Below, piece after piece: positions 2,357 through 41,969 of a DNA stretch of 64,000 bases (position 1 is its first letter; every line of letters starts with the position of its first letter). This DNA is from Penicillus capitatus (Eukaryota; Plantae; Chlorophyta). The stretch covers positions 1,283,081 through 1,347,080 of the forward strand of contig OZ287695.1 of the NCBI GenBank assembly GCA_965649825.1, in the 5' to 3' direction. The notes under the pieces were generated by a model, which made no database searches, was not told the DNA's origin, and worked only from the letters and a program-made list of their open reading frames with translations. The translations under genes and the position numbers were made by a program.

Positions 2357-5300
2357 ATGGACGGACAATACACCACTTCTGGATTTCAGCTCTACGGGCA
2401 GCCTCTACAGGTAACCGACGCCAACCGGACAAACGCCTCTCTGTCGAATAGCGAGCGTCGACTCCGCATTCGAGCCGCCATCTGAGAGGGTTTTATATCT
2501 GACACCACGTATCATAGGCGCCGACGGTGCAGCAAAGTGGACAGGCGTTGAACCAACCTGCCCCGGCGCAACAGGTTGGCGGATTCACCTTGATTCCTGC
2601 GCCAACGGGCCCCGGTCAGCCTGCATTAACAAACCTGAGAAACCAGCCCGTACAAATCCTTCAGCAACCGACTCCAGCTGCACAGAATAAACCTCAGCAA
2701 CAAGTAAATCGAAGCAGAAGACAATGCGGATCTGGTAAAGGGATGGTTAGGGTGGCCTAGGAGCGATGGCCTTTCAGGCGCAGACAGCCCAGACGCAGCC
2801 GACACAACAATCTCAGCAGCAACGCCTCCCTGCTGCCCAAGTACGAGCGTTGTCTTCTATAGTGCTTGTGGGTTTGAGTGCCTATCTTTGGTGGACAGTT
2901 GCAGGGTTTGACTACTCAGCAATTGCAGTACCTTCAAGCAGCTCAGCAGAGTGGACAGTTAACGGCCCAAGGATTCCAGTCGTATTCTCAGCCGCCACCT
3001 CAGTTAGGAGCCATTCAGATTCTCCAGCCCAAAACGCAGCCGCAGCAAGGAGCAGTGGGCCGTGGATTTCAGCAAGGACAGCCGACACTGCAGGGAATGC
3101 AAGTGCTTCCACAGCAGACGCCACAGGCACCGCAGGCATTGCAGCCGGGGCAGAATCTTCAAGGCTTGCAGCAAGGACTGCAACAAGTTCCTGGATTGCA
3201 GACCATTCCTGGTGTCCAAATTCTGCAGCAGTATCCTGGATACAGCCAACAGCAGCAACAGCAGCAACTGAATGCCCCGATTCCTCCCAAACAGCCAACC
3301 GTTGCTGCAACCGGTTTCTCCTCAAGCTCTCAACAGCCAATCCATTCTGCTCCGGGAACGGCAAGTGGTCATCATACCGGCAGTCTTTTCAGCAACAGCA
3401 ATCAGAGGGGCAGTTATGGACAAGGACGCTATGCATGGAACGATCGAGAAAGGAACGAACGTACGGACTTCCGTGGACGACCTCGGGAACGGGGAAGGCG
3501 CGATGACAGAGGTAACAATGACCCACATCCATAACCTCTAATCTCACTCTTCATTCCTATCCATGACTTCTTCATCTCCACCCATCCATCTCTTCGACTT
3601 GACTTGGTCCTTCATCATCATCTCCTGTCTAATCTATGGTTTCCGTCCTGACAAGGTTCGTTTGGAACGCGGCCACCGGCTCGAGAAGCTCCTTCACGTT
3701 TCTCTCGTGAAAGGGAGCCCTTTCGTCACGACAGAGGCAGCAAAGAGCGTTATGATCGTGGTTTTAGAGACTACAATCGCCGAGATCGCGACCGAAAGCC
3801 ATCTCCGGTGCATCATCACTACGACTTCAAGGTCTGTCTACGCTCAGATTCTTTGCAACATGTCGCAGCGTTGGATTGTGTGAAAAGAAAGATGATGCTC
3901 GGAAAGAGCCACATCGAGAGGTCTTGCATAAGCCTGTTCATCCTCCTGTCAACCAGGAATTCAAGACAGCGCTTCCATTGCCATTGCCTGCAAAACCTCC
4001 ACCCGTGGCAGACTACGTCGTCAAAGTGCCTCAAGTGCCATTTGCTACACACGAACGTGACTACTCTGACATTACACGGCGATACACACATCTCTACATC
4101 TCCCCCGATTTCACCAAACTCGTCTGCTGTTGGGCTAAGGTATGGAAGTGCAAAGCAATTGTATGGCTGGTTCATGTACTGTCATTCTATCCTAATGAAT
4201 GATCATTCATCTGGGATCGAGGCTGATAGAAGGTGTGGTGCTCTAGACGCCGACGGCGATACGGTATCCTTATGGATGTTCCCTGTGTCCACTGAACAAG
4301 CCCGTGAAGTTTGAAATGGTACAAGGACCCTACGAGGCAGAACAGGAGATTATCTTGCCGGCTGCTCACAACGACGTGCCTCAGGCTGTCCGATGGAATG
4401 CAAAGGTATGGGACATATCCGCCGTCTGAATGGAAAAACTGATGAATTGGCTTGTTGGCAGTGCACGTTCATTTGTGGATTGGATGACAAAGCACATGAA
4501 GACATTTTGAGAGGGAAGTTCGATGGCGGGACGCATGTGATGAACGCTCTAAAATTCGTGACCGTGCGAGAAGAGAAGGATAAGAAAAAGACAGGAATCA
4601 TGTGCCTTGGTGGTCCATACGATCCAGAATTGGATGGAGGCGATCCTGCCGAGTAAGCCATTCCTTCTTGACCGCTTCTTTCTCAAAAGAGCGTGTTTTT
4701 GTTCAGAGATGTGGAAGGATTGAAGCGTGCCTGCATACGTCATGTGAAAGCCCAGACGCTATTGGATTTGACGCCCTGTCGTTCGTGGATTCGTTTTTGT
4801 GATGTGCATTATCGCAGACTGGATGATGACGGGCACGAATGCGAAGAAGTCACTGTCATTTTCTTGATCGATGTCTCCGAGCTGATTCCTTCCGCCGAAG
4901 AGTGGCCAGCAATCTGGAAAGAACAGAATGAATGGAAGAAGAGAGCAGCGCAGGCTGATATCCTTCCAGTGAGCATCCTCCACCAAACAAAGCTGTGTGA
5001 CATGTGTCTGTTGTCCAGGCGTCCACCACACAGAACGATGCCCCGGCGGCGCAGGAGAATGGAAAGGACTTGGAAAAAGAGACAGAAACGGAAGAAACCA
5101 AGAAAGATGCCGACGTTGTTCAGACAATGCATGCAGAGGACGAGAAGGTAGGGTGCATTCCTGGACGATCGCCACGAATGGAGAGTGGTGTTTGAAGATG
5201 GAGGATGTTCCTAAGGAAGTGAGTCTGTTGATGAAGTGTCGTGCTGCCAAGAATGGCAGAGTGAAGACAATGAGCATCAGCTTGGATGGTTTGTTGGACT

Positions 5301-6052
5301 ACGACGAGAATGATAAAGATGAAGCGACATTTGAATTGTCTCTCATGGCTGAGAGCTTCAATGAGATGTTGATGCGAGACTATGGACTCCTGATTCTGAA
5401 TGCATTGATGGAAAACAAGAGCATGACAGCAACGACAACACAGCTCGACGACAAGAAGCGTCCCGGCAGCCTATTGCCGCAGGAAACACCAGAACCCCTT
5501 GGAAAGAAACAAAAACAAACAGAATCGAAAACAGAACCTGAGACAACGATGGATCATCTGCCTGAGAAGGCAGAAGAGGCGGCGGCGGCCCATGAGGGAG
5601 CAGCTGAAGAGATGGAGGTGCAGTATCCAGATTCGCCTGGAGATATCGTCCATGTTGGTGACATCGAAGCACAGCCTGAGTCCGCTGCGAAGGAGGTTCC
5701 ACCCGAATCGACCACCTTTTCCTCGACACAGCAGACATCCGATGCGAAACAGGAGACAGCGACGGTCGATGTGGTGATGGAGGAGGACACAGATGCCAAG
5801 AATGGCGAGCAGCCTGCTGTGAATGAAGAATTGCTTTTTGCATTTAGATACTTTGATCGAGCAGGTTGTGGATACCTTAAGTGTGATGATTTGCGTCGCC
5901 TGTTGCATAACTTAGGCTGCTGCCTCGCTCCAAGAGTGGTTCGAGAACTGGTTCATGGAGCAGCTGCCATGAATAAAGAGAAGCTCGACAGAGTCTGCTA
6001 CCGTTCCTTGACAGACAAAGGAACGACGGCGCCGCCTCCTATCAACGACTAA
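2357..6052 (+). CDS. CCAR1: Cell division cycle and apoptosis regulator 1 (CCAR1/DBC1 family), multi-exon
   Basis: Q-rich N-terminus, R/E/D-rich segment, DBC1-type GIMCLGGPYDPELDGGDP, conserved SLDGLLDYDENDKDEATFELSLMAESFNEML and C-terminal EF-hand-like FAFRYFDRAGCGYLKCDDLRRLLHNLG. Confidence 0.85.
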
Positions 6053-9422: not shown

Positions 9423-12400
9423 ATGCTTGCTAAGAATGCACGCATTCAGCCTCTCGTCTCACTTCTTTACACATCCTTGAGGTGACAGGCGCGCCAGTCA
9501 GCGATATTGTGCCCAAGAGATATGGGTGACAGGTCTGAAGTGGCGTTATGGCGGTCGATGCCTATCTCATCATCGATACGGACACTTTATGGAGGCCCTC
9601 AGATAGATAGGGTGCTGCGAGAAGATACCCAGTTGGAGGTCGAAGATGCCATGAAGATAGCATCGCTTATTGAACGGTTTCGTCACCGAGGACATCTCTG
9701 TGCCAATTTGGATCCTCTCGGACGGGTCCAAAGAGGCCCCTGGATGTCCGAGCAGCCTAATAACCGTCACCGGTATGTTCTGAGTCGGAAACGGGCACAC
9801 AGCACGGCTCTTTAGTGGCTCTGAGCGATGTCTCGTGGATTTGTTGGACAGCTATCCGTATGAAAGAAGTCTGGAGGAACGCGCACGATACATTGCTGCC
9901 AAACTCAATCTGCAAAACGGCAAAGATCCTTTGCGGAAGTACTACATTGGCAGTATTCTTCCAGGTATGCCTGCCTCCTGCATTGACGCTGCGGAATGGA
10001 TGCATAGAATGATGTGACAGGAGATGTACCACAGTACTGGAATCTGGCGGAGATCGTCGAAAAAATGACCAAGTGCTACTGCGATACACTGTCCATTGAA
10101 ACGGGACATCTTTCGACGCAAGAACAGATGGATTGGATCTCCGATAGATTCGAGAACAGAAAAGCGCTCAGTCCCATGGACAAGCGGCGAATTCTCCATT
10201 CCCTTATCGAAGCCGATCAGTTTGAACGATTTCTCGCCGAGAAATTTCCGGCTACCAAACGGTCCGTGTCCAAAGTTGCTGGTGATGATCTCTGGCATTG
10301 TTGGCGTTGAGCAGATTTGGCTTGGAGGGCTGCGAAGCTGTGCTGCCAGCGCTGAGACATGTGATCCATCAGTGCAGCCTAAACGGTGTTGACAAAGTCG
10401 AGATCGGCGTTGCCCATCGAGGTCGTCTCAACATCCTCTGTAATCTTCTCGGAAAACCGTTTGGGGCACTCTGCAATGAACTCGCCGGATTCCGCAGTGA
10501 ATTTGAAGTTCTCGCTTCCGACTGCTGAGAATGTGCGTGACCTGTCGATCTGCAGGTTGGCGATGTGCTCTACCATCTGGGGCAGTCCGGCGAACTTCCC
10601 TGTATGGGTAAAGATGGATCGGTAAAGTCTGTTCGTTTGTTCGTAGCCCCCAACCCCAGTCACTTAGAATTCATCAATCCCGTGATTCTGGGAATGGTAC
10701 GTGCAGAACAGAAACTCCTGAACGATATCGAGCGAATGCGTGTCATGGGATTGCTCATTCACGGAGATGCTTCCTTCAGTGGCCTAGGCATCGTGGCCGA
10801 AACGCTGCAACTATCAGATCTCGAAGGCTTCGGCACTGGGGGTGCCATTCACATCGTCATTAACAACCAGGCACGGCATTCATCAGAAGCTCCTCCCCTT
10901 GATAGCTGTCTGCCCTGTGGACAGATTGGATTCACAACGATTCCGGCATCTGGGCGATCGGGTCTGCATGCGACAGACGTTGTGAAGATGATAGGCGCTC
11001 CTATTCTCCACGCCAATGCAGATGATCCAGAATCGGTCCATCAGGCATGTCTCATTGCAGCGGAATGGAGAAGTGTGTTTAAACAAGACATCGTGATCGA
11101 TATCGTCGGATACAGACGACACGGACACAACGAACGTGACAATCCAGAATCTTTCCTTCCGCTGACTTACGAAAGCGTCAAGAAGCATCCCCGTGTTGAA
11201 TCCATCTACGCAGCCAAACTCATTGTCCGTCTTGAGCATCTCACAGAGAGAGAATCGTGCTGGAATGTAGAAAGAAGGCGTTGCATCCACAGAAGAGGTG
11301 GAGCAATGGATGTCGAAAAAGAGAAGAGATTATGAGCAGGAATGGAAATGGTTCAAGGAAGGAAAGTACCAAGAGTCGGCAGAGCAGTTTCTTTCGTCGA
11401 ATTGGCAGGGCGCTGCTCTGCAGGTGTGCCACAAGATTGTCCTCGCAGCCACGTGAGTGATGTGACAGGAATTGTACAAGCAAGAGAGGGGATCTGTTGA
11501 GATGTTTCATCAGGAACCGACGGGTCTGCCTATTGAAACTCTGAAGCTGGTTGGAGAGAAGATCTGCCAAGTTCCGGCGGGTTTCGTTGTCCATGAGCAC
11601 TTTCGTCAGATCTTTCAGGATCGTTTGCAAATGATTGAAGGTCCTCAGGGCCGTGTGAACTGGGCAATGGCTGAGGCCTTGGCCTTCGGCACGCTCGTTT
11701 TGCACAGGTATGCACATGGGGTGTCCATAAACTGCTCTAAGTCTTTTCTGCAGAGGGGACAAAAAATGTAAGGATACGAAGACAAGTGCATCAGATCCTT
11801 CGCTGGGCTTGAACAAGGGCCATTACCATGTGCGTCTTTCAGGCCAAGATGTGGAAAGAGGCACATTCAACCACAGACATGCTGTTCTCTATGATCAACA
11901 GACAGGCGCACGTTGCGTTAAGCTAAATGAAATTGTGCAAGGGAGACAAGACACCGTGGAGATATGGAACTCGCCACTTTCGGAAGCAGCCGTGCTCGGA
12001 TTTGAATACGGCTTCTCTCTGGGCTCCAAGGACAGGGCTCTTGTCATCTGGGAGAGTCAGTTTGGCGATTTTGCCAATAATGCTCAAGTGAGATCCGCCG
12101 TCATCGACGAAGAGAGGCATCGCATTGACTGTCCAAGTAGGTCTTGATCGATCAGTTCTTGGCTTCTGGGCACCAGAAATGGGGACAGCAGTCAGGTCTG
12201 GTCTTGCTTCTGCCGCACGGCTATGATGGGGAAGGACCAGATCATAGCAGTGCTCGACTGGAACGTTTTCTGAGTCTCTGCAATGACGATCCGGATCATC
12301 TTCCAGGTCACTCTCCAGAATTTCAAAGACAAATCACGCAAACCTTCGAGGCCATTACCAAAGACTACGGCCGGAAGATTAACCGTCAACAAGCTTCTGA

Positions 12401-13383
12401 TCTCCTGAAGTCACATCAAAGCACAATTCTCCAGACAATCGACCTTCGTGTTATGTTAGGTCTATTGGCATTCTTATGGATGGAAGGGGCAGAAGTCCAG
12501 CAAATGGAAAAGGTGAGATGCTGGATCTGCTGTGGAATGAAATGGGTCTCAGAGAGAACGCGCCCATTACAGAATCGGACTGGAACAATTTCATGGTCCA
12601 ATACAGTCGACGAAACGCTGAACGTCACGCAAACCTCTTTGTTGTCAATGCCACCACGCCTGCTCAATTCTTCCATGCCCTTAGAAGACAGGTCACTCTC
12701 CTGGCAAGTCCATCACACAGTACATGTTCTGTTGCAGTGCAATCTGCCTTATAAGAAGCCATTGGTGATCATGAGTCCTAAGTACTTGCACCACCATCGT
12801 CCCTGTACCTCTGCCCTGGTGGATTTCTCCACGGGTACGTTTTTCAATCGCGTCATCGATGACGGGAAGTCCTCTGATAACATCCGTCATCGTACCGTGG
12901 ATACCTCGACAGGAAAGTCGTTTCTAAAATTGCCCGAAGAGATTCGCCGAGTGATTCTGTGCTCGGGTCAGATCTATTACCATCTCTCAGCCGCTCGACG
13001 ATCCAGAGGCATTCGTGACATCGTTCTGGTCCGATTGGAGCAGATTTCGCCTTTTCCACATGACTTGATCACACGAATCGTCTCGCAGTACTTAGATGCA
13101 GAAATCGTATGGTGTCAGGTACACATCCACAGTCATTGTCCACGAGAGCTCGATTCCGGAGAGCGATGTGACGTAGGAAGAGCCGAAGAATATGGGAGCG
13201 TGGCTCTACGTGCGACCGAGAATGGAGACAGCCATGCGCGAACTGTGTGGCAAGATGAAACGGACACCACGCACACTGCACTACATTGGCCGTCCTGTCT
13301 CAGCCTCGACTGCCACGGCATCCTTTCACATTCATCGCAAAGAAAGCCAAGAGATTCTGCATGCTGCATTGACAGTCGGATAG
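9423..13383 (+). CDS. OGDH: 2-oxoacid dehydrogenase E1 (OGDH/DHTKD1 family), mitochondrial, divergent; about 10 short introns
   Basis: Transit peptide [67 protein letters not shown] (ThDP motif), [71 protein letters not shown]. Substrate (2-oxoglutarate vs 2-oxoadipate) uncertain. Confidence 0.9.
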
Positions 13384-13409
13384 GAATGCATTCATTGTCT
13401 GTTGTGACA

Positions 13410-15489
13410 CTATGGCATTTTTCTTTGTACCACTTCAACCACACGCGTCTTGACAGTCTCACTGATCTTGGAGACCGCACGTTCTGTCTCGGCACGGCGA
13501 AAGAAACCAAGATAGCAGCCCGAGATCAGTATGGATAGAATGAGTACCCAACGCCATGCCTTGGACTGTGCACGAAAAACGCTAAACCCATTGTCGTCCA
13601 AAGCGTACTGCGGGAGTGGAGGATTGAGCAGGACCACATCTTTACCATTCTGCAAGATAAAATCTCCAATCTCTCTCAGCTGACGTATCATGACAGATGT
13701 CAGTCGTTTCTGATAAACGACGTCGCCGATGGCCAGTTCCAGATGTGTTTCCTCGGGATGCCAACTTATTCTAGGATGGCTGTCCGCTGGATAGAGAATG
13801 GGATCGCGATTGTGCTTATCCATAGATTTGAGTCCAAAATCGTCACAGAGGTACTCACTCAAACCCAAAATGAGAGCTTCCAGCTGATCAAAGGAGATCT
13901 CTTCGCAGATCCACGTGGTATCCTCTTCCGTTTGCTGACGATTCAGCACTTTGGATGTGAACCCTTTGATCTTTTTGTGCTTCTCTGACGGTCGATGCTG
14001 GAAATGCGATGGAAGAGGTGGATCTTCATTGCTCAGGATGCCAATCCACACGGTATCTGCTCTTGGGATCTTCATGACTTGCTCATAGACTTTGGCAGCA
14101 TGTGTAAAAATACTGCTCTCTTGGATTCCTTCGAATGGATCCTGTATACCGAGCAGGAATCGTGTGAGGTCCCTCTTTCTCCGCATCCGTTCTCTCAGCT
14201 TCTCCACTCCTCTGCCACGCACACGCAGAGCGTAATGTACATCATGGTACCCACTCTGCAGTCCACGTATGAACGCCTGAGTTGTGACCATAGACGAGAG
14301 CTACAGAACACGGTGTCACGTGTCGCTTTTCCACGAGACATGCATCGAACAATGGGATTCGAGATTTGCGGATCTTCATCTGCATAGTCCGTGGCGGCGT
14401 CAACTGCCGCTGCAAGACAGGCGGTGTGTATGCTCTCTCTCAGTCGGAGACTGATATTGGTCTCTCTATCCATCACGTCCTCTAGGCAACAGATATAAGG
14501 CGTGATTACTATTTTTTAGGTATGCTGCCCGGACTTTGCTCTTGTGTCGACTGAATGTCGCTTCCATTGTTCTCTGTCGCATCTCTTTGCTTTTCAATCA
14601 GCGCAATTCTGGACCAAAGTTCGTCGATGCATACAGATCTGGTTGTCTGCATTCTCTCTGTCTCGTATCCTGACATCTTGTGAAAACGTGAGTGCGGATC
14701 AGAGTTTAGACCGTACAAAGGAGCAGAGATACCATGCTCATAGCACGTTGATGCTCTTGATCGATCGAATGTGCCATTACGCGACGCGTTTCTTCTGATC
14801 CAAAGGCATAGACACAGACCGTCAGCCAATCTCCCAAGTGGGACAAGACCTGCAGCACTGGATTCTCCACTCCCTTTTCATTCAACTCTTCTATCTAGCT
14901 TTGCCAAAAATCGATACAGCACACATCCGGCATCTCAGAGTGCACCTTCTCGAGTTTCTCCTCTTCGAAAGGCAGTTCAGATTTTAACTTCTTAATCAAA
15001 GCGTACTGAAGTTTTGCTCGATATCGATGGTACTCCTGTCGCACCAATCAAGACGAGGCTTCGAAAATGTGACATTGGTGGTCCGTCATGTATACTTGGT
15101 GAATGGCAAGTCGTGCAGCAATGTCTGCATCTTTCCCAGTCAAGGTCCCGAAGAGCTCGACCTCGAACCACGAGCACGAAATGCTCGTCTGGACATCCAC
15201 TTCCACGTCGTTTCTCTCTGTCACGAATCCAGTCACGGTCTTCACACACGCATTCACACCTGTTAGTCATCTCAATGATTTCATGTACTATGTCACACTT
15301 CTGTCGTATCTCGTTGTGCGGCGGAGAATGTCCACGAGAGACGGCGTTGAAGGGACCTTTCTTTCTGTTCGAGAAAACGAGCAGCGCGCGGGCGTTGACG
15401 GATCGAAAGAGTCTCTCCATGGATGCTGCTATAAATTCGGCACCTTCCGCGGCAGGCGTCGCGTATCCGTGAGCGAACCGTACATGCAT
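13410..15489 (-). CDS. Uncharacterised multi-exon protein (~570 aa) with a C-terminal transmembrane helix, possibly organelle-targeted
   Basis: Six short GT-AG introns join the track fragments into one frame: ...HNEIRQK|VNACVKTV...SWFEVELF...IHQ|[10 protein letters not shown]...|IEELNEKG...RAMSM|MSGYETE...|...PI|[13 protein letters not shown]...[19 protein letters not shown]. Confidence 0.65.
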
Positions 15490-15770: not shown

Positions 15771-18700
15771 ATGGCGCAGCAGTTATCGCAAAGACGCACT
15801 TTTGAAATACAGCCGGGGTCGATGCACGCGCTAACTGAGGGTATAAACGATAACGAGGACGACCACGGTGAACGGGCCCCTCAAGAGCCTCCTGGTCTTT
15901 CGAGACTCGTCACTTCTGAAATCAAGAAAGTTGTGAAGTTCAGAACCAATCGCGAATATTGGGATTCGTTACCCGTGGTCTCGAAGCTCTTCATGTTCAT
16001 GTCACTCATCGATGTTTGCATGGTTATCGGCTATGTCATCTGGCAAGTCCTCGAAGTATGTGCCCCTTCACTCTGCTTATGGCCACATTTCTCATGTGTC
16101 CTTCTAGATGGCAGATTTCTTCGAAAGCGAAACGAATGATGCCAAGAGAGAAGAGCATTTGCATGTTGTCCTGGGGATGCTCGTCACAGCCGTGTTTCTT
16201 ATTATTTTTGTGTTGGATGCGATATCCCAGGAAAATGATTTCGAGCTGCTTGCGTGTATCCTGCTCATTGTTGTCGTTGCCGGTCGTGTGATTTACTTCA
16301 CGGTGAGTGAGCATTGCTCCCCTGCTGATGTGACAGCACTGAATGTCGCCAAATGCTGTGTAGATTGCGGCGGGATTTAGCACCTGGTCACAGATTCTGG
16401 GAATCGCCATTGTATCGGTCGCTGCGATTATCACAACCCTGCTTGCTTGTTTGACCTATAACAGATTTGGATGGAGAGTCTACAGTCATTTGGCATCCGA
16501 TCTCCGAGTAAAGCATGCAACTGAACGGACAATTCTCTACTTTGCACAAAACCGATTTGCCACTCTGGTGAAGCTGGATCTACAGGTCAGCTGTACTGGC
16601 CCTTGCTTGCATCTGTAGGATCGTTCTGTTTGGTAGTTTCTTGTTTTGACGGCGATTATGGGATTCGTTATGTCTTTTCAAAACTACGATGGGTCTGTGG
16701 GAAAACATACGACAACCCTTATCATGCTCATTTCTACATCCGCTGGTTTTTTGATTGGATTTGCCTGGCTGGGAGCTTCATATTACGGAGTTCGTCACGA
16801 AAAGCAAAAACTGGTACAGGTGCTCGGATTTGCATGCATTTTTACATTCATCCTCCCAATTGGAGCCGTCGTTGCAGGTATCGACCTCTCTTTACCCCCA
16901 TACCCACATCTAATGGTCCTTCTGTGTCTCGCTTACAGCCTATATGGGTGAGACTGCCCACGAGAGGGCTGCCTCGGAGTCTCTCCTCATTTCTACCATC
17001 TTGCTAGTCCTAATCCGTCTCCTTGTGTGTGATGCTTGTTGCGTATGTGACCCGCGTGGACGGAGTGCGTGTGTATTTACAGGTTTGGCATTACATGGCA
17101 AAACTGATGACTTTGTCTGCCGCTAAACACGATAAGAGTGAAAAATCTGATCACGCTCTCAAATTCCGAATGTCGAATAAACACCCTGATCTCCTCCCCC
17201 TGCTCAAAGGAGCTTGGCTGGTCAGACATTCCTCCATTGAAACGTGTGTCTCATGCACACGCTGTGTTTTAGATAAAGCAATCGCCAACTTCTCCGAACA
17301 AACGCCGTTTCTTTCAATTATCTCAAGATCACACGACACTTCGATGGGCATGGAAGAGTTATGTGTTGCTGTACTACGTCGACGAAATGGAAACGGACGA
17401 CAAGGCGAACAAAATAACACTTCACTTTTCAATCGGGCCAAATTTGACTGTCAGTTTTGACACGGCCAACGAGTACGAGACATGGAAACGTGGACTGAGT
17501 GTACTCTTGGCACTGCTGATGGCACCAGACGACAATCTTGAACAGCACAGCCATGTCAATTTGTCCGCGCGTAGACCAAAGCGCAAAATCGAAGGAAGAG
17601 AAGCCAGTTAAGCCGTGCTGTCTCGTACACAGACATAAATCATGTGGTTGCTTTTGAACAGGTTCCACATTTGATGCATTTCTCGAGAGGTTGGGCGTCA
17701 GCACTGCTCGGAATCAGGCCCTCCGTGCATCGCAGCATGGGCATGTCACTCAGCATCCTCTCAAAGATGCACAGAAGGAATGGAAAATGAAGTTGGAGTC
17801 CAAGCACCATCCATCTGGGACAGAATCGAATAATCTGAAAATGCAGCTGAACACCCAGACGAGCGATATCCCTGCCCAGCGTCAGTCTTCACGGATTCCT
17901 TCGTGTAAAGAGGGCCCAAATGCAGGCATCTATCCACAGCAGTCTCTCGATTCTCAAGGTACCCCTCTTCACCATGCCTGTCTTCTGAACCGTGGGTCGG
18001 TGTTCTTGTGAAACAGGTGAGTCGTCGGGTGATTCTGCAACTCCTTCTCAGGGGTCCGATCGGCAAAATACCGAAGGAGAACGTGGAATCCTCGGCCGTA
18101 TTCCTTCATTCGTTGAAACCATTGAATTTACCGATCTGGAACAAGGAAAATTTTTGGGATCTGGCGCTGAAGGTGCTGTCTATGCTGCTTGGTATCTGGA
18201 CACACCTGTCGCCATGAAGAAAACCAATTCTGTTCACGAGCTGGAAATGACGCTTTGTGCGGGTCAACACGATAATGTGGTGGGTCTGAGGGGTATTGCC
18301 AAAGAGGGATCATCAACATACATTGTTCTGGAGTATTGTCCGAGGGGAACACTCGATGTCTTGCTGCATCACACGATGACGTGTCGCTGGGAACCTGCTA
18401 AAGTACTGCAGATGGTGCGGAGCATCGCGCGTGGCGTTCTGCATCTTCATTCACGCAAACCTGCCATGTTGCACCGAGATTTGAAACCGGCGAACGTTTT
18501 TGTGAGCCACGGTCTGTTGCTGAAGATTGGAGATTTTGGAATGAGCCGTCAGCTCAAGGCCTCGCCAGAAACGGAACAGAAGGCGACGAGAGGAAGGATC
18601 CGGCGCACACTGACCCCAGGTGTGATCGGAACGGCCAACTACACAGCGCCTGAACTTCTCGACGAAAGATTGCAGTCTCAGGAATACAATGTTGAGCGTA

Positions 18701-19069
18701 TTCTGAAAGCAGATGTTTATTCCTTTGGGGTGACCATGTGGGAAATTGTTCAAAGAGAGCGTCCATTTGAGGGAATGGAATTCTATCAGATTGTGACATC
18801 GTGGTCCAGTGACCCAGATTCCATGAAACTAGAGCCGTTTTCAATACCTAGAGGCCGTAAACCGGAAGAGATCGCTCTCATGAGATCGTTGCAAGAGCTG
18901 ACAGTCGAATGCACGGATGTCGATCCGGACAGGTATGTCTCTCTGCATGTTGATCATATAGATGCTGAGAGATTGATGTGACAGGCGACCGAGTATGAGG
19001 AATGTAGTGAACAGGCTCAAAGACATGCACGTGGAACTTCGACGGGTCGCCGGAGACGGAGCTGTGTAG
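15771..19069 (+). CDS. Multi-pass membrane (~8 TM, UPF0658-like) + PLC-delta-type PH domain + TKL/Raf-like Ser/Thr kinase fusion; nine introns
   Basis: All junctions are GT-AG and keep frame from ATG 15771 to TAG 19069. TM part has QENDFELL, FGWRVYSHLASD, LVKLDLQ, GVRHEK. PH part is DLLPLLKGAWL|IKQSPTSPNKRRFFQLSQDHTTLRW...EYETWKRGL. Kinase has GSGAEG, VAMKK, HRDLKPAN, DFG, APE, DVYSFG. Confidence 0.8.
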
Positions 19070-19122
19070 AATCTGATGTGCGGTTTGACTGACACCATTC
19101 CCGATGACATTTAGCACCCACC

Positions 19123-19127: not shown

Positions 19128-19267
19128 GGCAAACGGCTTTTTAGCTTGGGGAATGCCGCCCTTCATCATCTCAGCATGATGCGACGTTCAGTGTCGCGTC
19201 ATCGCTGAACAGTACTTACCTTCCGTCTCATATGAGCATGACGGATTCTGTCCGTTCTGTAAGAACA

Positions 19268-22200
19268 ATGTGGTCGTGCAAAATCCTCAACTTCGTCTGC
19301 TTTCTATGTTTGTATGTGCACTTCTCTGGCAGGGCTTTTGCATTAGAGTGTGACTTGGCCTTGCATATCGACGGCGCAGCGTCGGAATTTAATGTTACGG
19401 GACGTGCCAATTCAGCAGTGCTGCCGAATATCGAGCTCGAACCGGCGTACCCTGACCAACGCGTGGGTCTAACTGGGACGCTGTACTTCCGCTCTGCTGG
19501 AGGATGTCCTTCCAATTCCCGACAGCTGCAGCGCGTCCTGTCATCTGGGAACTTCACCATTGCGGCAGCCAATGATCTTCGCCTCTACCCATCCAATGCG
19601 ACGCTCTTGGCATCTGTCTTCGCTCGATTGGAATTCCTGGACCTACAGTTTGTCTACCGTTGGCGCAAAGTTCGATCTGACGGCGATGAGAATCGCATCG
19701 TGGGCAACACCACTCTAAGAGTCGTGCAAGGAAATGTTCAGTACACAGTGAATGAGACACTGGGATTCGATGTTGAGCCAGGAGAGGCTTCCTTAACGAA
19801 CAACACGTCAAATCAACTGCAAGAAGCAGAACTCGCACTCAATGGCTCCAGAATGCGATTGGACATACCTGAAGCGGCGTTTTCCTTTCAGACTGACGTG
19901 GAAACGGGTGTCGATCTGATCCCTGTCTTGGAAGCTACATTGAATCTCACTGGTCGCATCGTGGCTGAAGCTTTTGTCGAATGTTCGGACAAGAGCTGTG
20001 GTGAAAATGGAAGATGTTTGGCATTAGAGAACGGGGAAAATGTTTGCGAGTGCGCCTGTGGTTGGGCAGGAACGGACTGTGACATTCCAAGTGGCTTCTG
20101 TGATTCTTACGGTGAACAGGAATCCACCATTCAACTCCTGCAACAAACCCTTGCTCAGAATGCAGCGCCGCCGTCGCCGCCGGAGACAACCACACGACCG
20201 TCTTCCAGACAAAACCTCATCCAACAGTGCGAAGAGCTCTTCACTTCTCGGCAGTGTCCAGATGCCAGATCGCAGTACAGTTTTGCCAATCAAGAATGCG
20301 TCTGTACAGAAGGATGGGTCGGAAGAGACTGCGATATTTGTACGGCTGGAGGAGCGTGTCCCGATTTCTATGAAGACGGTGCTGCCTGTTTAACGGACGG
20401 TGTCTACAATTCCCGTTCAGGAAAGAAGATCTACGAATGTGATCTGCGGGATACGGGTTTGAATGTCTTCGTTGGGAATTTCATTAAGTTTGTGTGTAAC
20501 ACGACTGGACCGCGATTCCATGATGCCGAATTCCAAGAATCTCAACAGAATGCTCTGACGACCGACCCTGTGAACAACACCCCGTTCTGTACTGTCGATT
20601 TTACCTATCAGGAAGACACCCCTGTCAACTGCACAGCATGGGGATGCACATATGCACCCGCCTCTACGAGAGTGGAATGCAGTACGATGCTGTGCGACTG
20701 CAAAGACTGTGACGCGATCGAAGGACTTGTGAACAATATCAACAGCATCTCGCTGGAGTGTGATGACGATCGTCAATGTGTGGTGGACTTTGGCGGACTC
20801 TCCATTGCCGTGGAAGCTCCCTGCAATATCGGCGAATGTCTGCTTCCAAGCAATCCCGATTTCAGAGTGTTTCGAAGAGGAAAGGACGGAATAAACGTGC
20901 GTCTCTCTCCTTGTTCAGTTCCAATTTCATCGCGTGTTCCTTTAGATCAATTGGGATATCTTTATCATCTCTATGCCACTGACGTTTCTGGGAGTGTTGC
21001 TGGTGTTGTTTGGCATTCCTTCTGCGGTTCTGAGCATCAGGATGACGACACCTGTTGCCGAAAGGACAGACAAAGCGACCAAGACACCTACTGAAGGACA
21101 CAGTGGCGCCGAGATCTCTTTCAAAGCTGTTAGTTGTATGGTGCCCACCAGACTTGATTCCGGTACCATCATGAAGCAGTGGAATTCCTTCCTGAAGAGA
21201 ACGGAAGAGAACAATCATCTAGTACAACCACGTGCAGATTCTCCCATCCACCAGCACATTCTGCACACGCCTCCTGGATACAAGTCTGTCCTGCACGGGA
21301 TCAGTGGGACAGTCCGAAAAGGCACACTGACTGGGGTGTTGGGCCCATCGGGTAGCGGCAAAACGACGTTTCTCAGTATCATTTGTGGCATCTCGGCGGA
21401 TCGTACATCGGCCAGAAGGATCGACGGAGAGATACTGATCAATGGCAGACGAGCCGGACAATGGGCCAAGCGTCTGCTCGCTTTCGTCCCTCAGGATGAC
21501 AAACTCCTTTCCACATTGACTGTTCGCGAGTCCCTGATGTACTCTGCCGTTCTGCGTCTGCCTGGAAGCGCAATGCGTGTGATTAAGCAGAAAGTCGATG
21601 AAACGATGATCGAGCTCGGTCTCAAGTCTGTCGAACATTCGCAAGTGGGAGGGGTTATCAACAAGCGAGGCATCAGTGGAGGGGAACGACGGCGAGTGAC
21701 GATCGGTATGGAGTTAGTGATCGATCCGAATCTAATGATCTTAGACGAGCCCACTTCTGGATTAGACAGCTTTACGGCCACAAGTCTGTTGCGCACCCTC
21801 AAGAACATCTGCAACGGAGGCCGGACAGTAATCCTGTCGATGCATCAACCCACCCCAGCCATGTTAGACATGTTGGATCAATTGCTGTTGTTAGCTAAAG
21901 GATTTCAAGTCTATCTGGGACCGCCAGCAGAGGCAGCCGGTTTTTTCAAACGCCATGGATTCCAGCAAGAAGACAAGACCACACACATTGCGGAACACAT
22001 GTTGGAAGTCGTTAGCAGTCAGGAAAATCTGATTCCTTTGCTCGAGTCCATTTACCATGGAAATAACGGCGGCGTTGCTGGAGAAGGAACGGAGACGGAG
22101 TGGCAAGAATCGACGATCTCTCACAATGCCACAACGCGGAGTTTGCCGAAGGCCATGACTGAGCACATGCAGAAATTCCTTGTTTCTATCTCCGTCCTGC

Positions 22201-23039
22201 TCTGGAGAGGTTTCTTGGACATTCTTCGAAACCCTGCTCTGCTCCTGGCCCATGTGATCGTTGCTATCGCCATCGGCGTCTTCTGTGGTGGCATCTTTTA
22301 CGATGCGGATCTGACCATCGACGGTGCTCAGAACCGTCTGGGGGCTGCTTTCTTTGTGTTGGCTTTCTTGGGATTCTGGTCACTGACAACGATCGATCTC
22401 CTCCACGTGGAACGGGAGATCGTTGCTCGGGAGACATCCAGTGGATACTATAACCCATACGTCTATCTCGTTTCCAAGATCCTATTGGATGCAGTGCTGC
22501 TGCGTGTATTGCCAGCCACTCTGATGACGTTGCCGCTCTATTTTATGATGGGACTTCAGAACACCGTGGAAAAGTTTGTGATCTTTCTCTTCACCGTTGC
22601 AACATTCAACATCACCGTTGGGCTGATCGCCATGACCATCACTCTTTTGGCGCACACAGCGGGAACGGCATCACTCTTAATCAATACCGTCCTGCTTGTG
22701 GGTTTGCTGTTCGCTGGGCATTTGGTCAATATCCCATCCATGCCAAAGGGTCTCCAATGGTTACATCATCTATCCCCTTTTCATTACGGATTCCAAATTC
22801 TGGCGGTGAACGAAATGCTTGGACTCCGATTGAATTTTGTCGTGCCTGGCTATGCCGATGTTGACGGCATTGGAGGTGATGTCTTTCTCAGGACAGTTGG
22901 CATCGAAGATCACGACATCACTTATGATCTCAAGGCATTTATCATCTTCTATGCCGTTGCACTTGTCTTGACGTACATGGCCATGTGGATCCATCTGCAT
23001 TTCAGATCGCTTCATCGCCGATTGACAGCACTCTTTTGA
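19268..23039 (+). CDS. ABCG half-transporter with signal peptide and large EGF/Cys-rich ectodomain (yeast Adp1-like architecture); one intron
   Basis: Signal peptide MWSCKILNFVCFLCLYVHFSGRAFA, EGF repeats (CGENGRC...CECACGWAGTDC; CVCTEGWVGRDC), TM, Walker A GPSGSGKT, signature ISGGERRR, Walker B ILDEPTSGLD, ABC2 membrane domain. Intron gtgcgt...ctttag joins GIN|INWDIFII. Alternative ATG at 19232. Confidence 0.9.
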
Positions 23040-26892: not shown

Positions 26893-27911
26893 CTATGCGT
26901 TATCGTCACCCTTACTCATGATCGCACTTAGTGCCTGCGCGATTTGACATCCGATTCTCGCGTTGTTCTTTACGAGACGTATGTTCGATTCTAGAGACGC
27001 CCCGCCCGTCAATTCGGTAATGCGCTTCAGAAGGAAGGGCGTGACTTCTGGTCCTTCGATTTCGGACGCTGTGCATTCGTCGAGTGCGATGCGAATGCAT
27101 TCTTCGACCTTTTCGCCTTCGACAGCGTCTTCCTCTGCAATTGGCACGCCTAGGGAGGACGATAAAGGTAGACCAGTCAACATCCATTCATGCAAGCGAC
27201 AAGACGAAGCGTACCCAGGACAACGCCTCTCTGCAGCTGCAGCGCCAAAGATGCATGAATCAAACGGGCTGCCTCTTCTGCTGTGTCGATACGAAAAGGA
27301 GCTCTAGATCCACTTCTCGGTGTAAAGAAGGCCGGAAATTCGTCGGTCTGATAGGCAGCGACGCAGACACCTTGGGTCTCGAGGACTTCGAGCGTGCGCG
27401 GGATATCCAAAACGGATTTCGCTCCTGCACAGACGACAAGAACAGGAATGCGTCCCGCCGTTGTTAAATCGGCTGAGATGTCCAGACTGTTCTGCCCTTC
27501 GCGATGCACGCCGCCAATGCCGCCGGTGACGAACACCCGAATACCAGCCAAGTGTGCGATGTGCATGGTCGTCGCTACTGTCGTTGCACCGTCGAGTTTT
27601 TTCGCCACTACGTAAGGCAGATCGCGGATGGAACATTTTCGCACGTCACGGCCTTTCTTGGCCAAAAACTCGAGCTGTTCTGCCGTCAGTCCAGCACGGA
27701 GAGAACCTTCCAGAACAGCAATCGTCGCTGGAACGACGCCGTACGATCGAATCAGTTGTTCGACGCTCTGTGCCGTGGCGAGGTTCTGTGGATAAGGCAT
27801 GCCATGCGTGATGATCGTGCTCTCCAATGCCACCACTGGTCGACCTTTGTCTAAGGCGTCGCGCACTTCATCACTGAGAACGACGGGACACTTGGGCAAC
27901 GTTGTCGACAT
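26893..27911 (-). CDS. psuG: Pseudouridine-5'-phosphate glycosidase (PsuG/IndA/PUMY family); one intron
   Basis: PVVALESTIITHGMPYPQN, ATTVATTM, FVTGGIGGVHR, DISADL, CAGAKSVLDIPRTLEVLETQGV, TPFLLKRI. Possible upstream ATG at 28019 would add a presequence. Confidence 0.92.
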
Positions 27912-28098
27912 TGTTTGACGCCGAAAGCAACGCCGCCGCAGGTTGTCAAATGGCGACGCGTCGTTTCGTCGAATCTCGCGGCGATAAAACGTACGACATG
28001 TACTCGACGCATGCATCATCACCCTCCAAAAATGGCCTCGGAGGAATGGGGATTTACACACCGACGTCTGTCGCGCTCGACATCTGTCCTCCTTCAAA

Positions 28099-28645
28099 TC
28101 ACTTATTGGTTGCACGGGTGTAAATCAACTGCTTTGCGTGCTTTGTCACTTCCCGAATCACCCCTTTGTCCATCAGTTCCTTAATGGCTGCCCTCGCAAG
28201 ACTGCCATTGATCTGAGAAAGCATTCACGTTTTGTCGGGCTGTCTTTTCAGGACAAAGAGGCATCTTCACTTTCAGTCGGTCAGCCAAAACAGACGGCGT
28301 GATCATACGATACGTTGGCACTTCGGCAAGGAGCTTTTCGTACGTCGCCTATGTACCGTGGTCTCAGATGAGGCATGAACGATACCCTGTGATCGACAGA
28401 CCGCGTCAAAAGTGACGGCGTTGTTCACTTTTTCCTTCAGTTTTCCCTTCGACCATTTCTGCAGCCGCACGCACCAACATCGCTTTCTTGGCCATAAGTG
28501 AAGCGACGCACCTTCTTTTTTCCTTTTCCGGCGTTCGCTGCAGCAGCTGCCTTGGCACTCTTCGATTTCTGCTCTCCTTTCGGCGGCTAGAACACAGAAG
28601 AAGCGCTTCGCAGATGGATGGGCAAACGGACGCACATCTCACCAT
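28099..28645 (-). CDS. RPS25: 40S ribosomal protein eS25; four introns
   Basis: Spliced M|PPKGEQKSK...GKGKKK|[19 protein letters not shown]|[26 protein letters not shown]|[14 protein letters not shown]...IYTRATNK. Confidence 0.92.
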
Positions 28646-31531: not shown

Positions 31532-36263
<4,732 letters not shown>

Positions 36264-41693: not shown

Positions 41694-41969
41694 TCTTGAA
41701 CGTTGCTCAAACGAAAAACAGCAGCGACGAACGCTGTCTTGGCAGATTTCTAGGCGAAGCGACAACGACGACGGCGACGACTGTCAAACGCACGTGCACG
41801 TCACGCACTCTGACGTGATTCCTTGGTCTCGAAGCGCAAATTAAAGGCCTCTGGAAAGAAATGACTTCCTGTCCGTCTTAACGTCGCACGTACGTCTCTC
41901 AATCCGCGGGCATGGACTGGTGGATGTTTGTTGTACGACAAAAACGGTTTATCGCTGCTTCCATCGCCC

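What the first reader, a model, noticed from the sequence alone, without database searches (positions are those of the whole stretch)
15771..19069. Candidate new receptor-kinase class: ~8-TM UPF0658-like domain fused to a PLC-delta-type PH domain and an active TKL kinase
Seen: one continuous spliced frame with about 8 hydrophobic helices, arranged like a duplicated 4-TM unit. It carries ENxFEL, FGWRVY..LASD, LVKLDLQ and GVRHEK, motifs I recall from the functionally uncharacterised UPF0658 Golgi membrane family. Next comes DLLPLLKGAWLIK...KRRFFQLSQDHTTLRW...EYETWKRGL, closely paralleling PLC-delta1 PH (DLQALLKGSQLLK...RERFYKLQEDCKTIW...AQHWVQGL), then a kinase with all catalytic motifs intact. 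Established: PLC-delta PH binds PI(4,5)P2/IP3, and typical plant receptor kinases are single-pass. Inference: a self-contained multi-pass sensor whose kinase output is gated by phosphoinositides, which would also give UPF0658 domains a sensory role. This is the best novel-system candidate in the window.
Basis: partly seen in the sequence, partly recalled or inferred. Interest (0 to 1): 0.76.

Follow-up and report, generated by a model that had tools for sequence, protein, structure and literature searches.

The report
Eight-helix membrane kinase of green algae
This is a real, single green-algal gene that joins an eight-helix membrane domain of unknown function to a lipid-binding-type PH domain and an intact protein kinase; the combination is conserved across chlorophyte algae, I found no study of it, and it looks like a kinase built into the membrane, not a receptor for outside signals.

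Summary
Window 15771-19069 (+) is a 10-exon gene with nine GT..AG introns of 51-61 nt. It encodes 932 aa:
- an 8-helix membrane domain made of two DUF7789 units;
- a juxtamembrane PH domain;
- a variable linker of about 160 aa;
- a TKL Ser/Thr kinase of the MLK/Raf-like MAP3K type, with every catalytic motif intact.

The fusion is real. The model aligns collinearly with full-length homologues. These include a 3176-nt contig with one unbroken 931-aa ORF (65% identity) and annotated genes of Caulerpa, Bryopsis, Myrmecia, Symbiochloris, Chlorella and Auxenochlorella.

The membrane domain is homologous (hhalign 99.8%) to stand-alone DUF7789 proteins of fungi, amoebae and a malawimonad. One of these carries the name UPF0658. 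Its confident model (pLDDT 90.6) has no solved structural relative.

The PH fold is confirmed. PLC-delta1 PH (1MAI) is the top match by sequence profile and by Foldseek. The basic pocket K391/K399/R401/R413 is nearly invariant, but lipid specificity is unknown.

All fused membrane domains lie on one side of a strongly supported tree branch, so a single origin of the fusion is the simplest reading.

The conserved loops face the cytosol and the outer loops are short and variable. The "receptor" reading is therefore weak.

Verdict: a new variant of multi-pass membrane kinases. Interest is moderate.

The parts
15771..19069 (+). Whole coding region. Ten exons (15771-16055, 16108-16302, 16364-16585, 16637-16877, 16939-17024, 17083-17220, 17273-17606, 17662-17958, 18017-18932, 18985-19069), 932 aa.
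   Evidence: Frame tracing and an enumeration of splice sites. The model aligns collinearly with ten full-length homologues, with no gaps at the junctions.
15771..15953 (+). N-terminal cytosolic tail (aa 1-61). It is variable apart from an ERAPQ motif.
   Evidence: Alignment A1. The cytosolic placement is inferred from the even number of helices and the positive-inside pattern.
15954..16456 (+). First DUF7789 unit, helices 1-4 (aa 62-191), with the invariant ENxFEL turn at 16231-16248 and R155 inside helix 3. Introns 1 and 2 lie within this span.
   Evidence: Pfam PF25044 scores 26.9 bits against a cut-off of 25, E 5e-6. AlphaFold2 helices. Invariant columns.
16463..16582 (+). Long cytosolic loop 4 (aa 194-233) carrying FGWRVYS...D.R.K...LVKLD. 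It is the best conserved stretch of the membrane domain.
   Evidence: Mean top-residue frequency is 0.75 among the fused proteins and 0.51 with stand-alone relatives included. G196 and W197 are invariant in all 41 sequences.
16583..17103 (+). Second 4-helix unit, helices 5-8 (aa 234-350), with the VRHE turn at 16787-16804. Introns 3, 4 and 5 lie within this span.
   Evidence: AlphaFold2 model, pLDDT 90.6. It aligns with the second DUF7789 match of the stand-alone homologues. Profile comparison of the N half against the C half gives E 2e-5.
17185..17533 (+). PH domain (aa 378-476) of the PLC type, with an N-terminal helix. It is split by intron 6 (17221-17272). The basic pocket is K391 (17276-17278), K399-R401 (17300-17308) and R413. 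The helix Trp is W460 (17483-17485).
   Evidence: Pfam PH_12 scores 24.3 bits, below the cut-off of 27. A profile search of the PDB puts 1MAI first at E 0.004. The AlphaFold2 model has pLDDT 86. Foldseek puts 1mai first, TM-score 0.74. Pocket residues are kept in 28-31 of 31 family PH domains.
17534..18123 (+). Variable linker (aa 477-635). Its length ranges from about 150 to about 630 residues across homologues. It holds short conserved motifs: FLxxLG(I/V) near aa 506-513 and RQSxRIP near aa 573-579. Introns 7 and 8 lie within this span.
   Evidence: Alignment A1. Domain coordinates in the homologues. Pfam finds no match (protein 3).
18139..19018 (+). Protein kinase domain (aa 641-916) of the TKL group, with all catalytic motifs intact and a long activation segment. 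Intron 9 (18933-18984) lies within this span.
   Evidence: Pkinase E 4.7e-39 and PK_Tyr_Ser-Thr E 2.1e-37. The best solved relatives are ZAK/MLT, CTR1 and DLK. Motifs checked.

Best explanation
Shown:
- One gene encodes a kinase that is permanently embedded in a membrane.
- The N-terminal 8-helix domain consists of two DUF7789 units. It is an ancient eukaryotic module that also exists alone in fungi, amoebozoans and a malawimonad. Its polar signature residues are conserved, so it is more than a greasy anchor.

Inferred:
- With eight helices and a C-terminal PH domain and kinase, both termini should be cytosolic.
- The conserved motifs (ENxFEL, FGWRxY...LVKLD, VRxE) then all lie on the cytosolic face. 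The outer loops are short and variable.
- The PH domain follows helix 8 after about 27 basic residues. It is therefore held against the same membrane leaflet.
- Its canonical K-Xn-K-X-R pocket plus a beta3 arginine is nearly invariant. It most likely binds an anionic phosphoinositide head group in cis.
- A long flexible linker then carries an active MLK/Raf-like Ser/Thr kinase.

Most likely working. The state of the cytosolic leaflet (phosphoinositide content) and/or of the 8-helix domain sets the PH-membrane engagement. That engagement sets the activity or reach of the tethered kinase. The kinase then phosphorylates nearby or downstream targets, possibly a MAPK-type cascade. On this reading it is a membrane-state or endomembrane-identity kinase and not a receptor for an extracellular ligand.
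For: Single gene:
- The largest non-coding gap inside the gene is 61 nt.
- The model aligns collinearly with 918-956 aa homologues.
- Locus L001 is a 3176-nt contig with one unbroken 931-aa ORF that holds all three domains.
- At least 15 other cluster representatives carry the membrane domain, the PH domain and the kinase together.

Family of the membrane domain:
- Pfam DUF7789 matches above its cut-off.
- hhalign against stand-alone DUF7789 proteins gives 99.8%, E 2.6e-28 over 270 columns.
- The representative search found 457 relatives.

The membrane domain has a function of its own:
- E137, N138, G196, W197, K230, D232 and R155 are shared with the stand-alone proteins.
- The model is confident, pLDDT 90.6 and pTM 0.89.

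Conserved face. Inner loops score 0.73, helices 0.56 and outer loops 0.33.

PH domain:
- Foldseek puts 1mai first at TM-score 0.74, followed by many lipid-binding PH domains.
- The pocket residues are kept in 28-31 of 31 sequences.

Kinase. All motifs are intact and nearly invariant. The nearest solved relatives are ZAK, CTR1 and DLK.

Single origin. The fused membrane domains lie on one side of a branch with SH-aLRT 100.
Against: - No experiment bears on any functional step.
- Topology is inferred from helix count and charge distribution, not measured. Loop 2 (ENxFEL) is acidic, which does not itself fit the positive-inside rule.
- Lipid binding by the PH domain is unproven. Many PH domains bind proteins or nothing. 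Pfam PH_12 scores below its cut-off, and most PLC-delta1 ligand contacts are not conserved.
- No full-length model was made, so any contact between the PH domain or the kinase and the membrane domain is unknown.
- The biochemical activity of DUF7789 is unknown, so 'sensing' cannot be told apart from 'acting'.
- Several family members lack a detectable kinase. They are probably truncated models, but this was not proven.
Confidence: 0.5

Rival explanations
1. Transporter-kinase or channel-kinase ('chanzyme'-like). The 2xDUF7789 domain is itself the effector, for example a transporter, scramblase, channel or membrane enzyme. The attached PH domain and kinase then regulate it or report on it. The membrane domain does not gate the kinase.
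For: The membrane domain works alone in other eukaryotes. It carries conserved charged residues in or near the bilayer, such as R155, D132, E137 and R341. It has internal two-fold repeat architecture, which is typical of transporters. It folds as a compact 8-helix bundle.
Against: Foldseek finds no similarity to any solved transporter or channel; the best TM-score is 0.25. The profile search also finds nothing real. No transport motif is recognised. The direction of the regulatory arrow cannot be read from sequence.
Confidence: 0.25
2. Pure address tag. The 8-helix domain and the PH domain only place a MAP3K-like kinase on a particular organelle, for instance the Golgi or trans-Golgi where the fission-yeast UPF0658 proteins are reported to sit. 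They carry no sensing role.
For: The family name 'UPF0658 Golgi apparatus membrane protein' is attached to a homologue. That the fission-yeast proteins localise to the Golgi is my own recollection, not a tool result. PH domains commonly act as organelle-identity readers. The linker between the PH domain and the kinase is long and unconserved.
Against: A simple anchor would not need eight helices with invariant polar motifs kept from fungi to algae. The membrane domain is about as conserved as the kinase within the family.
Confidence: 0.15
3. Classical receptor kinase. The membrane domain binds an extracellular or luminal ligand and passes the signal across the membrane to the kinase.
For: The arrangement of a membrane domain upstream of a cytosolic kinase resembles the 7TM-kinase fusions of Dictyostelium, oomycetes and ciliates (PMC1420674, PMC10463195).
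Against: The outer loops are 5-16 residues long, gappy, and the least conserved part, 0.33 against 0.73 for the inner loops. There is no extracellular domain. The domain does not have a GPCR fold; TM-scores against GPCRs are 0.25 or lower. A signal peptide was not tested.
Confidence: 0.08
4. Gene-model artefact. Two adjacent genes (membrane domain plus PH domain, and kinase) were wrongly joined.
For: The genome is very compact. The next gene's ATG lies only 163 nt after this stop. Some homologues are annotated without a kinase, such as the 594-aa Ostreobium protein.
Against: Contig L001 carries an unbroken ORF across all three domains. More than 15 independent assemblies show the full architecture. 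The linker exon 17662-17958 is open, in frame, and carries motifs conserved in homologues. No non-coding gap inside the gene exceeds 61 nt.
Confidence: 0.02

Closest known systems
Stand-alone DUF7789 (Pfam PF25044) / 'UPF0658 Golgi apparatus membrane protein' family of fungi and protists
   Same: Homologous over all eight helices: hhalign 99.8%, E 2.6e-28. The same signature motifs are present (EN-x-F, FGW-x-x-Y, K-x-D, V-R-x-E), and so is the same two-unit build.
   Different: Those proteins are 300-400 aa long and carry no PH domain or kinase. The algal domains form their own branch, SH-aLRT 100. No function is known for either group. I did not compare directly with the fission-yeast proteins that gave the name.
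PH domain of phospholipase C delta-1 (PDB 1MAI) and PLC-type PH domains (Pfam PH_12)
   Same: It is the best sequence-profile hit (E 0.004) and the best Foldseek hit (TM-score 0.74). It shares the N-terminal helix motif PDL--LLKG, the beta1 Lys (K30 equivalent = K391), the beta2 Arg (R40 equivalent = R401) and the Trp of the C-terminal helix.
   Different: Sequence identity is only about 18%. Pfam PH_12 scores 24.3 bits, below its cut-off of 27. The K32 and W36 equivalents are Ser/Thr and Pro, and the beta3-beta4 contact residues are not alignable. PI(4,5)P2/IP3 specificity therefore cannot be transferred. There is no PLC catalytic core.
MLK/Raf-like MAP3K kinases of the TKL group (human ZAK/MAP3K20, DLK/MAP3K12; Arabidopsis CTR1)
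   Same: They are the nearest solved kinase domains, E 2.8e-25 to 4.4e-21. The subdomain motifs and the HRDLKxxN Ser/Thr-type catalytic loop are the same.
   Different: Those kinases are soluble and are recruited through leucine zippers, SAM domains or the EDR1/CTR1 N-terminal domain. This one is covalently membrane-embedded and has a PH domain. Its activation segment is about 15 residues longer. MAP3K activity is untested.
Multi-pass membrane-kinase fusions: Dictyostelium 7TMK1, GPCR-TKL and other 'GPCR-bigrams' of oomycetes, ciliates, amoebae and choanoflagellates
   Same: The design principle is the same: an N-terminal multi-helix membrane domain joined to a C-terminal TKL-type kinase (PMC1420674, PMC10463195, PMC6033456).
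   Different: The membrane domain here has eight helices, belongs to DUF7789 and does not have a GPCR fold. It carries an intervening PH domain. It is found in a different lineage (Chlorophyta) and arose independently.

Membership tests
DUF7789 / UPF0658 membrane protein family | Match to Pfam PF25044 above the curated cut-off | tested here: met
   26.9 bits against a cut-off of 25, E 5e-6, aa 62-191. The margin is narrow for this single sequence, but the family-level tests below back it up.
DUF7789 / UPF0658 membrane protein family | Homology to stand-alone family members over the whole 8-helix domain | tested here: met
   hhalign of A2 against A5 gives probability 99.8%, E 2.6e-28, over 270 columns. 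The profile search recovers stand-alone DUF7789 proteins.
DUF7789 / UPF0658 membrane protein family | Two tandem 4-helix units | tested here: met
   The AlphaFold2 model has eight helices. Seven of the ten stand-alone homologues scanned match Pfam twice. The N half against the C half gives E 2e-5. In the window protein itself Pfam sees only the first unit.
DUF7789 / UPF0658 membrane protein family | Direct similarity to the fission-yeast proteins that carry the UPF0658 name | not tested
The link rests on a Lichtheimia homologue named 'upf0658 golgi apparatus membrane protein'.
DUF7789 / UPF0658 membrane protein family | Golgi localisation | not testable with these tools
   It needs microscopy or cell fractionation.
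PH domain, PLC-delta type (Pfam PH_12) | PH fold: seven-strand sandwich capped by a C-terminal helix with a conserved Trp | tested here: met
   The AlphaFold2 model has pLDDT 86, seven strands and helix 83-101. Foldseek puts 1mai first at TM-score 0.74, with 33 matches at E <= 1e-3; those listed are PH or PH-like domains. W460 is kept in 31 of 31 sequences.
PH domain, PLC-delta type (Pfam PH_12) | Pfam PH_12 match above the curated cut-off | tested here: not met
   24.3 bits against a cut-off of 27, covering only 33 residues. The profile search of the PDB still ranks 1MAI first, E 0.004.
PH domain, PLC-delta type (Pfam PH_12) | Conservation of the PLC-delta1 Ins(1,4,5)P3 contact residues (K30, K32, W36, R40, E54, S55, R56, K57; the list is from my own knowledge) | tested here: inconclusive
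   The K30 and R40 equivalents are kept (K391 in 30/31, R401 in 28/31). The K32 and W36 equivalents are Ser/Thr and Pro. The beta3-beta4 residues could not be aligned. The generic K-Xn-(K/R)-X-R motif is present.
PH domain, PLC-delta type (Pfam PH_12) | Phosphoinositide or inositol-phosphate binding | not testable with these tools
   It needs liposome or lipid-overlay assays.
TKL-group protein kinase (MLK/Raf-like MAP3K type) | Eukaryotic protein kinase domain with all catalytic residues | tested here: met
   Pkinase E 4.7e-39. G-loop, K667, HRD, N759, DFG and APE are all present and nearly invariant in the family.
TKL-group protein kinase (MLK/Raf-like MAP3K type) | Nearest characterised relatives are TKL kinases | tested here: met
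   All seven PDB sequences at E <= 1e-20 are ZAK/MLT, CTR1 or DLK. I built no formal kinome tree.
TKL-group protein kinase (MLK/Raf-like MAP3K type) | Phosphorylates a MAP2K (MAP3K function) | not testable with these tools
   It needs biochemistry.
Plant-type receptor-like kinase (RLK/Pelle) | Signal peptide, extracellular ligand-binding domain, single transmembrane helix | tested here: not met
   The protein has eight helices, no extracellular domain, and outer loops of 5-16 residues. A signal peptide was not tested.
GPCR-kinase fusions (7TMK / GPCR-TKL bigrams) | Seven-helix GPCR fold in the membrane part | tested here: not met
   The domain has eight helices. GPCRs appear only as chance Foldseek hits: E >= 0.075, TM-score <= 0.25, rmsd 16-23 A.

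The most novel reading that the evidence does not exclude
The 2xDUF7789 bundle is an intramembrane or cytosolic-leaflet sensor or handler of a lipid (or another small membrane solute). In chlorophyte algae it has been hard-wired, through a phosphoinositide-reading PH domain, to a MAP3K-type kinase. This would be a self-contained membrane-state signalling protein. It would give the eukaryote-wide UPF0658/DUF7789 family its first functional assignment. It would also point to one way in which green algae reported to have no receptor-like kinases, such as Ostreococcus (PMC4143559), could couple membrane events to kinase cascades.
Probability: 0.2. Interest if true: 0.75.

Novelty: new variant of a known kind. 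Interest (0 to 1): 0.55.

Why it matters
DUF7789/UPF0658 is a widespread eukaryotic 8-helix membrane family. It occurs in fungi, amoebozoans, a malawimonad and green algae. It has no known function and no solved structural relative. A conserved natural fusion to a PH domain and an active kinase is a 'guilt by fusion' clue. It points to the cytosolic face of the domain and to phosphoinositide-rich membranes. It also yields concrete mutants to test: K391/R401, ENxFEL, FGWR and kinase-dead.

For algal biology, it adds a lineage-wide, multi-paralogue membrane kinase to organisms whose signalling repertoire is poorly charted. If it turns out to be only a localisation device, the result is a modest annotation improvement.

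Tried and rejected
1. Alternative splice sites for introns 5 and 7. Fifteen in-frame combinations exist. I kept donors 17024 and 17606 because only these give gap-free alignment with homologues and introns of the usual 55-58 nt.
2. Structural relatives of the membrane domain. Foldseek against the PDB gave only chance GPCR hits. The profile search against PDB sequences gave only de novo designed helical proteins at E >= 0.01. Both were rejected.
3. A search for other output domains in family members that lack a kinase. Pfam found nothing. They look like truncated models, not alternative architectures.
4. Literature searches. 'DUF7789' returned no papers. 'UPF0658' appears only in tables. Several combinations of PH domain, Raf-like or TKL kinase, and green algae or Caulerpa returned nothing relevant.
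5. The first profile search for named stand-alone relatives (A4) returned only 'hypothetical protein' names. A second search seeded with fungal members (A5) was needed to find the UPF0658 label.
6. Model coordinates are not exposed to scripts, so I could not analyse cavities, symmetry or electrostatics.
Full report
**What is in the sequence.** The window is eukaryotic nuclear DNA of about 50% G+C. Introns are very short and the next gene starts close behind this one. Three-frame translation of 15771-19100 shows coding frames that hop at GT..AG boundaries. Enumerating splice sites gives one consistent model of ten exons (15771-16055, 16108-16302, 16364-16585, 16637-16877, 16939-17024, 17083-17220, 17273-17606, 17662-17958, 18017-18932, 18985-19069).

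**Is the fusion real?**
- A search with residues 1-500 found full-length relatives of 918-956 aa that cover 91-98% of the query at 44-65% identity.
- The model aligns with them without gaps at any exon junction. This also settles the two ambiguous donors.
- The best hit, P0001, sits on a 3176-nt contig as one unbroken 2796-nt ORF. My local HMMs find the membrane domain, the PH domain and the kinase in it.
- Several other relatives lie on contigs barely longer than their ORFs (3016, 3752 and 4016 nt). That fits cDNA-derived assemblies, because the genomic copies here and in Bryopsis (5862 nt for 944 aa) are interrupted.
- Inside the window gene no non-coding gap exceeds 61 nt.
- I therefore reject a two-gene artefact, with a residual probability of about 2%.

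**Whose gene is it?** The named homologues come from several chlorophytes:
- Caulerpa lentillifera, two paralogues at 54% and 52% identity;
- Bryopsis, Ostreobium, Myrmecia, Symbiochloris and Chlorella;
- Auxenochlorella, Tetraselmis and an MMETSP marine transcript;
- Helicosporidium.

The window is thus from a bryopsidalean-type green alga related to, but distinct from, Caulerpa lentillifera. Every named fused homologue is a chlorophyte.

**The membrane domain.**
- Hydropathy gives eight segments.
- Pfam places aa 62-191 in DUF7789 at 26.9 bits against a cut-off of 25.
- A profile of the algal membrane regions, run against 1.8 billion representatives, found 457 relatives, 163 of them at E <= 1e-10. 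Among the 150 best listed, these fall into two kinds. The long proteins also carry the PH domain and usually the kinase. The 300-400 aa proteins are stand-alone.
- The stand-alone proteins named so far come from the amoebozoan Clastostelium, the malawimonad Gefionella, Mucoromycota, chytrids and aphelids.
- Seven of the ten stand-alone proteins scanned match DUF7789 twice.
- One stand-alone protein, from Lichtheimia, is deposited as 'upf0658 golgi apparatus membrane protein'.
- Profile-profile comparison of the algal and stand-alone sets gives 99.8% probability, E 2.6e-28, over 270 columns. It aligns ENxF(E/Q)L, FGWR(V/I)Y, LK(L/I)D and VRxE.
- The N half aligns to the C half at E 2e-5.

I could not compare directly with the fission-yeast proteins.

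An AlphaFold2 model from a 41-sequence alignment is confident (pLDDT 90.6, pTM 0.89) and shows eight long helices. Foldseek against the PDB finds nothing better than E 0.075 and TM-score 0.25, all chance GPCR hits. A profile search of PDB sequences finds only designed helical proteins. The fold therefore has no solved relative in the libraries available here.

**Which face matters?** The protein has eight helices and a cytosolic-type C-terminal PH domain and kinase. Lys/Arg are enriched in loop 4, loop 6 and the post-helix-8 segment. Both termini should therefore be cytosolic; this is an inference. On that topology the inner loops are the best conserved part. Mean top-residue frequency is 0.73 for the inner loops, 0.56 for the helices and 0.33 for the outer loops. 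The outer loops are 5-16 residues long and gappy. The same ranking holds when stand-alone relatives are included: 0.50, 0.36 and 0.14. This argues against an extracellular ligand site. It argues for a function at the cytosolic face or within the bilayer.

**The PH domain.**
- Pfam PH_12, the PLC-type model, scores 24.3 bits, below its cut-off of 27.
- A family profile searched against PDB sequences ranks PLC-delta1 PH (1MAI) first at E 0.004. It aligns PDL..LLKG...K...R..F..L.
- An AlphaFold2 model (pLDDT 86) shows an N-terminal helix, seven strands and a C-terminal helix.
- Foldseek ranks 1mai first (TM-score 0.74, E 2e-5). PLC-gamma, TAPP1, ARAP3, Akt and others follow.

The PH assignment holds, and the PLC-delta likeness is real but distant, at about 18% identity.

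Across 31 distinct family PH domains the canonical basic pocket is nearly invariant: K391 30/31, K399 28/31, R401 28/31, R413 31/31 and W460 31/31. The equivalents of PLC-delta1 K32 and W36 are Ser/Thr and Pro. Phosphoinositide binding is therefore likely. PI(4,5)P2/IP3 specificity is not established.

**The kinase.** Pkinase matches at E 4.7e-39, and every catalytic motif is intact. These motifs are nearly invariant among homologues. The nearest solved kinases are ZAK/MLT, CTR1 and DLK. All are TKL-group MAP3Ks.

**The linker.** Between the PH domain and the kinase lies a linker that varies from about 150 to about 630 residues. It has two short conserved motifs. Family members without a kinase carry no other Pfam domain.

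**Evolution.** In a maximum-likelihood tree of the membrane domain, all fused proteins lie on one side of a branch with SH-aLRT 100. With them sits P0022, which I suspect is a truncated fused protein. This fits a single origin of the fusion. Three subclades each contain trebouxiophytes, which suggests old paralogues.

**How it most likely works.** See the best explanation for the full statement. In short, it is a kinase permanently built into a membrane. Its conserved 8-helix module and tethered PH domain both address the cytosolic leaflet. PH-lipid engagement and/or the state of the bundle controls a flexible-linked MAP3K-type kinase. The shown parts are the gene structure, the domain identities, the conservation pattern, the family distribution and the single-branch grouping of the fused domains. 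The inferred parts are the topology, lipid binding, coupling to kinase activity and the downstream cascade.

The rivals are:
- a transporter or channel with an attached kinase (0.25);
- a pure organelle address tag (0.15);
- a classical receptor (0.08);
- a gene-model artefact (0.02).

**Comparison with what is known.** Each part belongs to a known family: DUF7789/UPF0658, PH and TKL kinase. The combination is not described in any paper I could find. Database names are 'hypothetical protein' or an automatic 'MAP3K dlk-1'. Multi-pass membrane domains fused to TKL kinases are known in Dictyostelium (7TMK1), oomycetes, ciliates and choanoflagellates (PMC1420674, PMC10463195, PMC6033456). Those use GPCR folds and have no PH domain.

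I therefore rate it a new variant of a known kind, with moderate interest (0.55). It is a good handle on an uncharacterised pan-eukaryotic membrane family.

Noticed in passing
window 19232-23039 (+): Directly downstream, with its ATG only 163 nt after the kinase gene's stop, lies a 620-aa Cys-rich ORF with a teneurin-like EGF match. It overlaps in another frame a 688-aa ORF encoding an ABCG-type half transporter (ABC_tran + ABC2_membrane). This may be one spliced gene, which would give an ABCG transporter an unusually large extracellular EGF-like N-terminus.
   Followed up: partly
window aa 506-513 (about 17677-17700) and aa 573-579 (about 17878-17898): Two short motifs, FLxxLG(I/V) and RQSxRIP, are conserved inside the otherwise variable PH-kinase linker. 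They could be docking, autoinhibitory or phosphorylation sites.
   Followed up: no
homologue set (P0003, P0004; tree): Caulerpa lentillifera has two paralogues. The family splits into three old subclades, each containing trebouxiophytes. Chlorophytes therefore seem to keep several copies of this membrane kinase.
   Followed up: partly
P0007 (Ostreobium, 594 aa), P0016, P0023 (Tetraselmis), P0058, P0061: These family members have the membrane and PH domains but no detectable kinase or any other Pfam domain. They are probably truncated gene models. A natural kinase-less form is not excluded.
   Followed up: partly
window 41928-44930 (+): An MTR4/SKI2-type exosome RNA helicase (DEAD, Helicase_C, MTR4 stalk and beta-barrel, DSHCT) is encoded in a single 1000-aa open frame. 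This is unusual in a window where the kinase gene has nine introns.
   Followed up: no
window 4997-6052 (+), 12144-13538 (+), 27177-28115 (-), 32086-33060 (-), 59839-60912 (+): The other large ORFs match a LAIKA-domain protein, the C-terminal part of 2-oxoglutarate dehydrogenase E1, a pseudouridine-5'-phosphate glycosidase (Indigoidine_A), a histidyl-tRNA synthetase-like protein, and a WD40/UTP15 protein. These are ordinary nuclear housekeeping genes, packed densely.
   Followed up: no
P0316 (Amoeboaphelidium protococcarum, 497 aa): This stand-alone-type DUF7789 protein is annotated with additional Mid1 (PF12929) and Frizzled Cys-rich (PF01392) Pfam domains. It is either another natural fusion of this membrane module or a merged gene model.
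   Followed up: no
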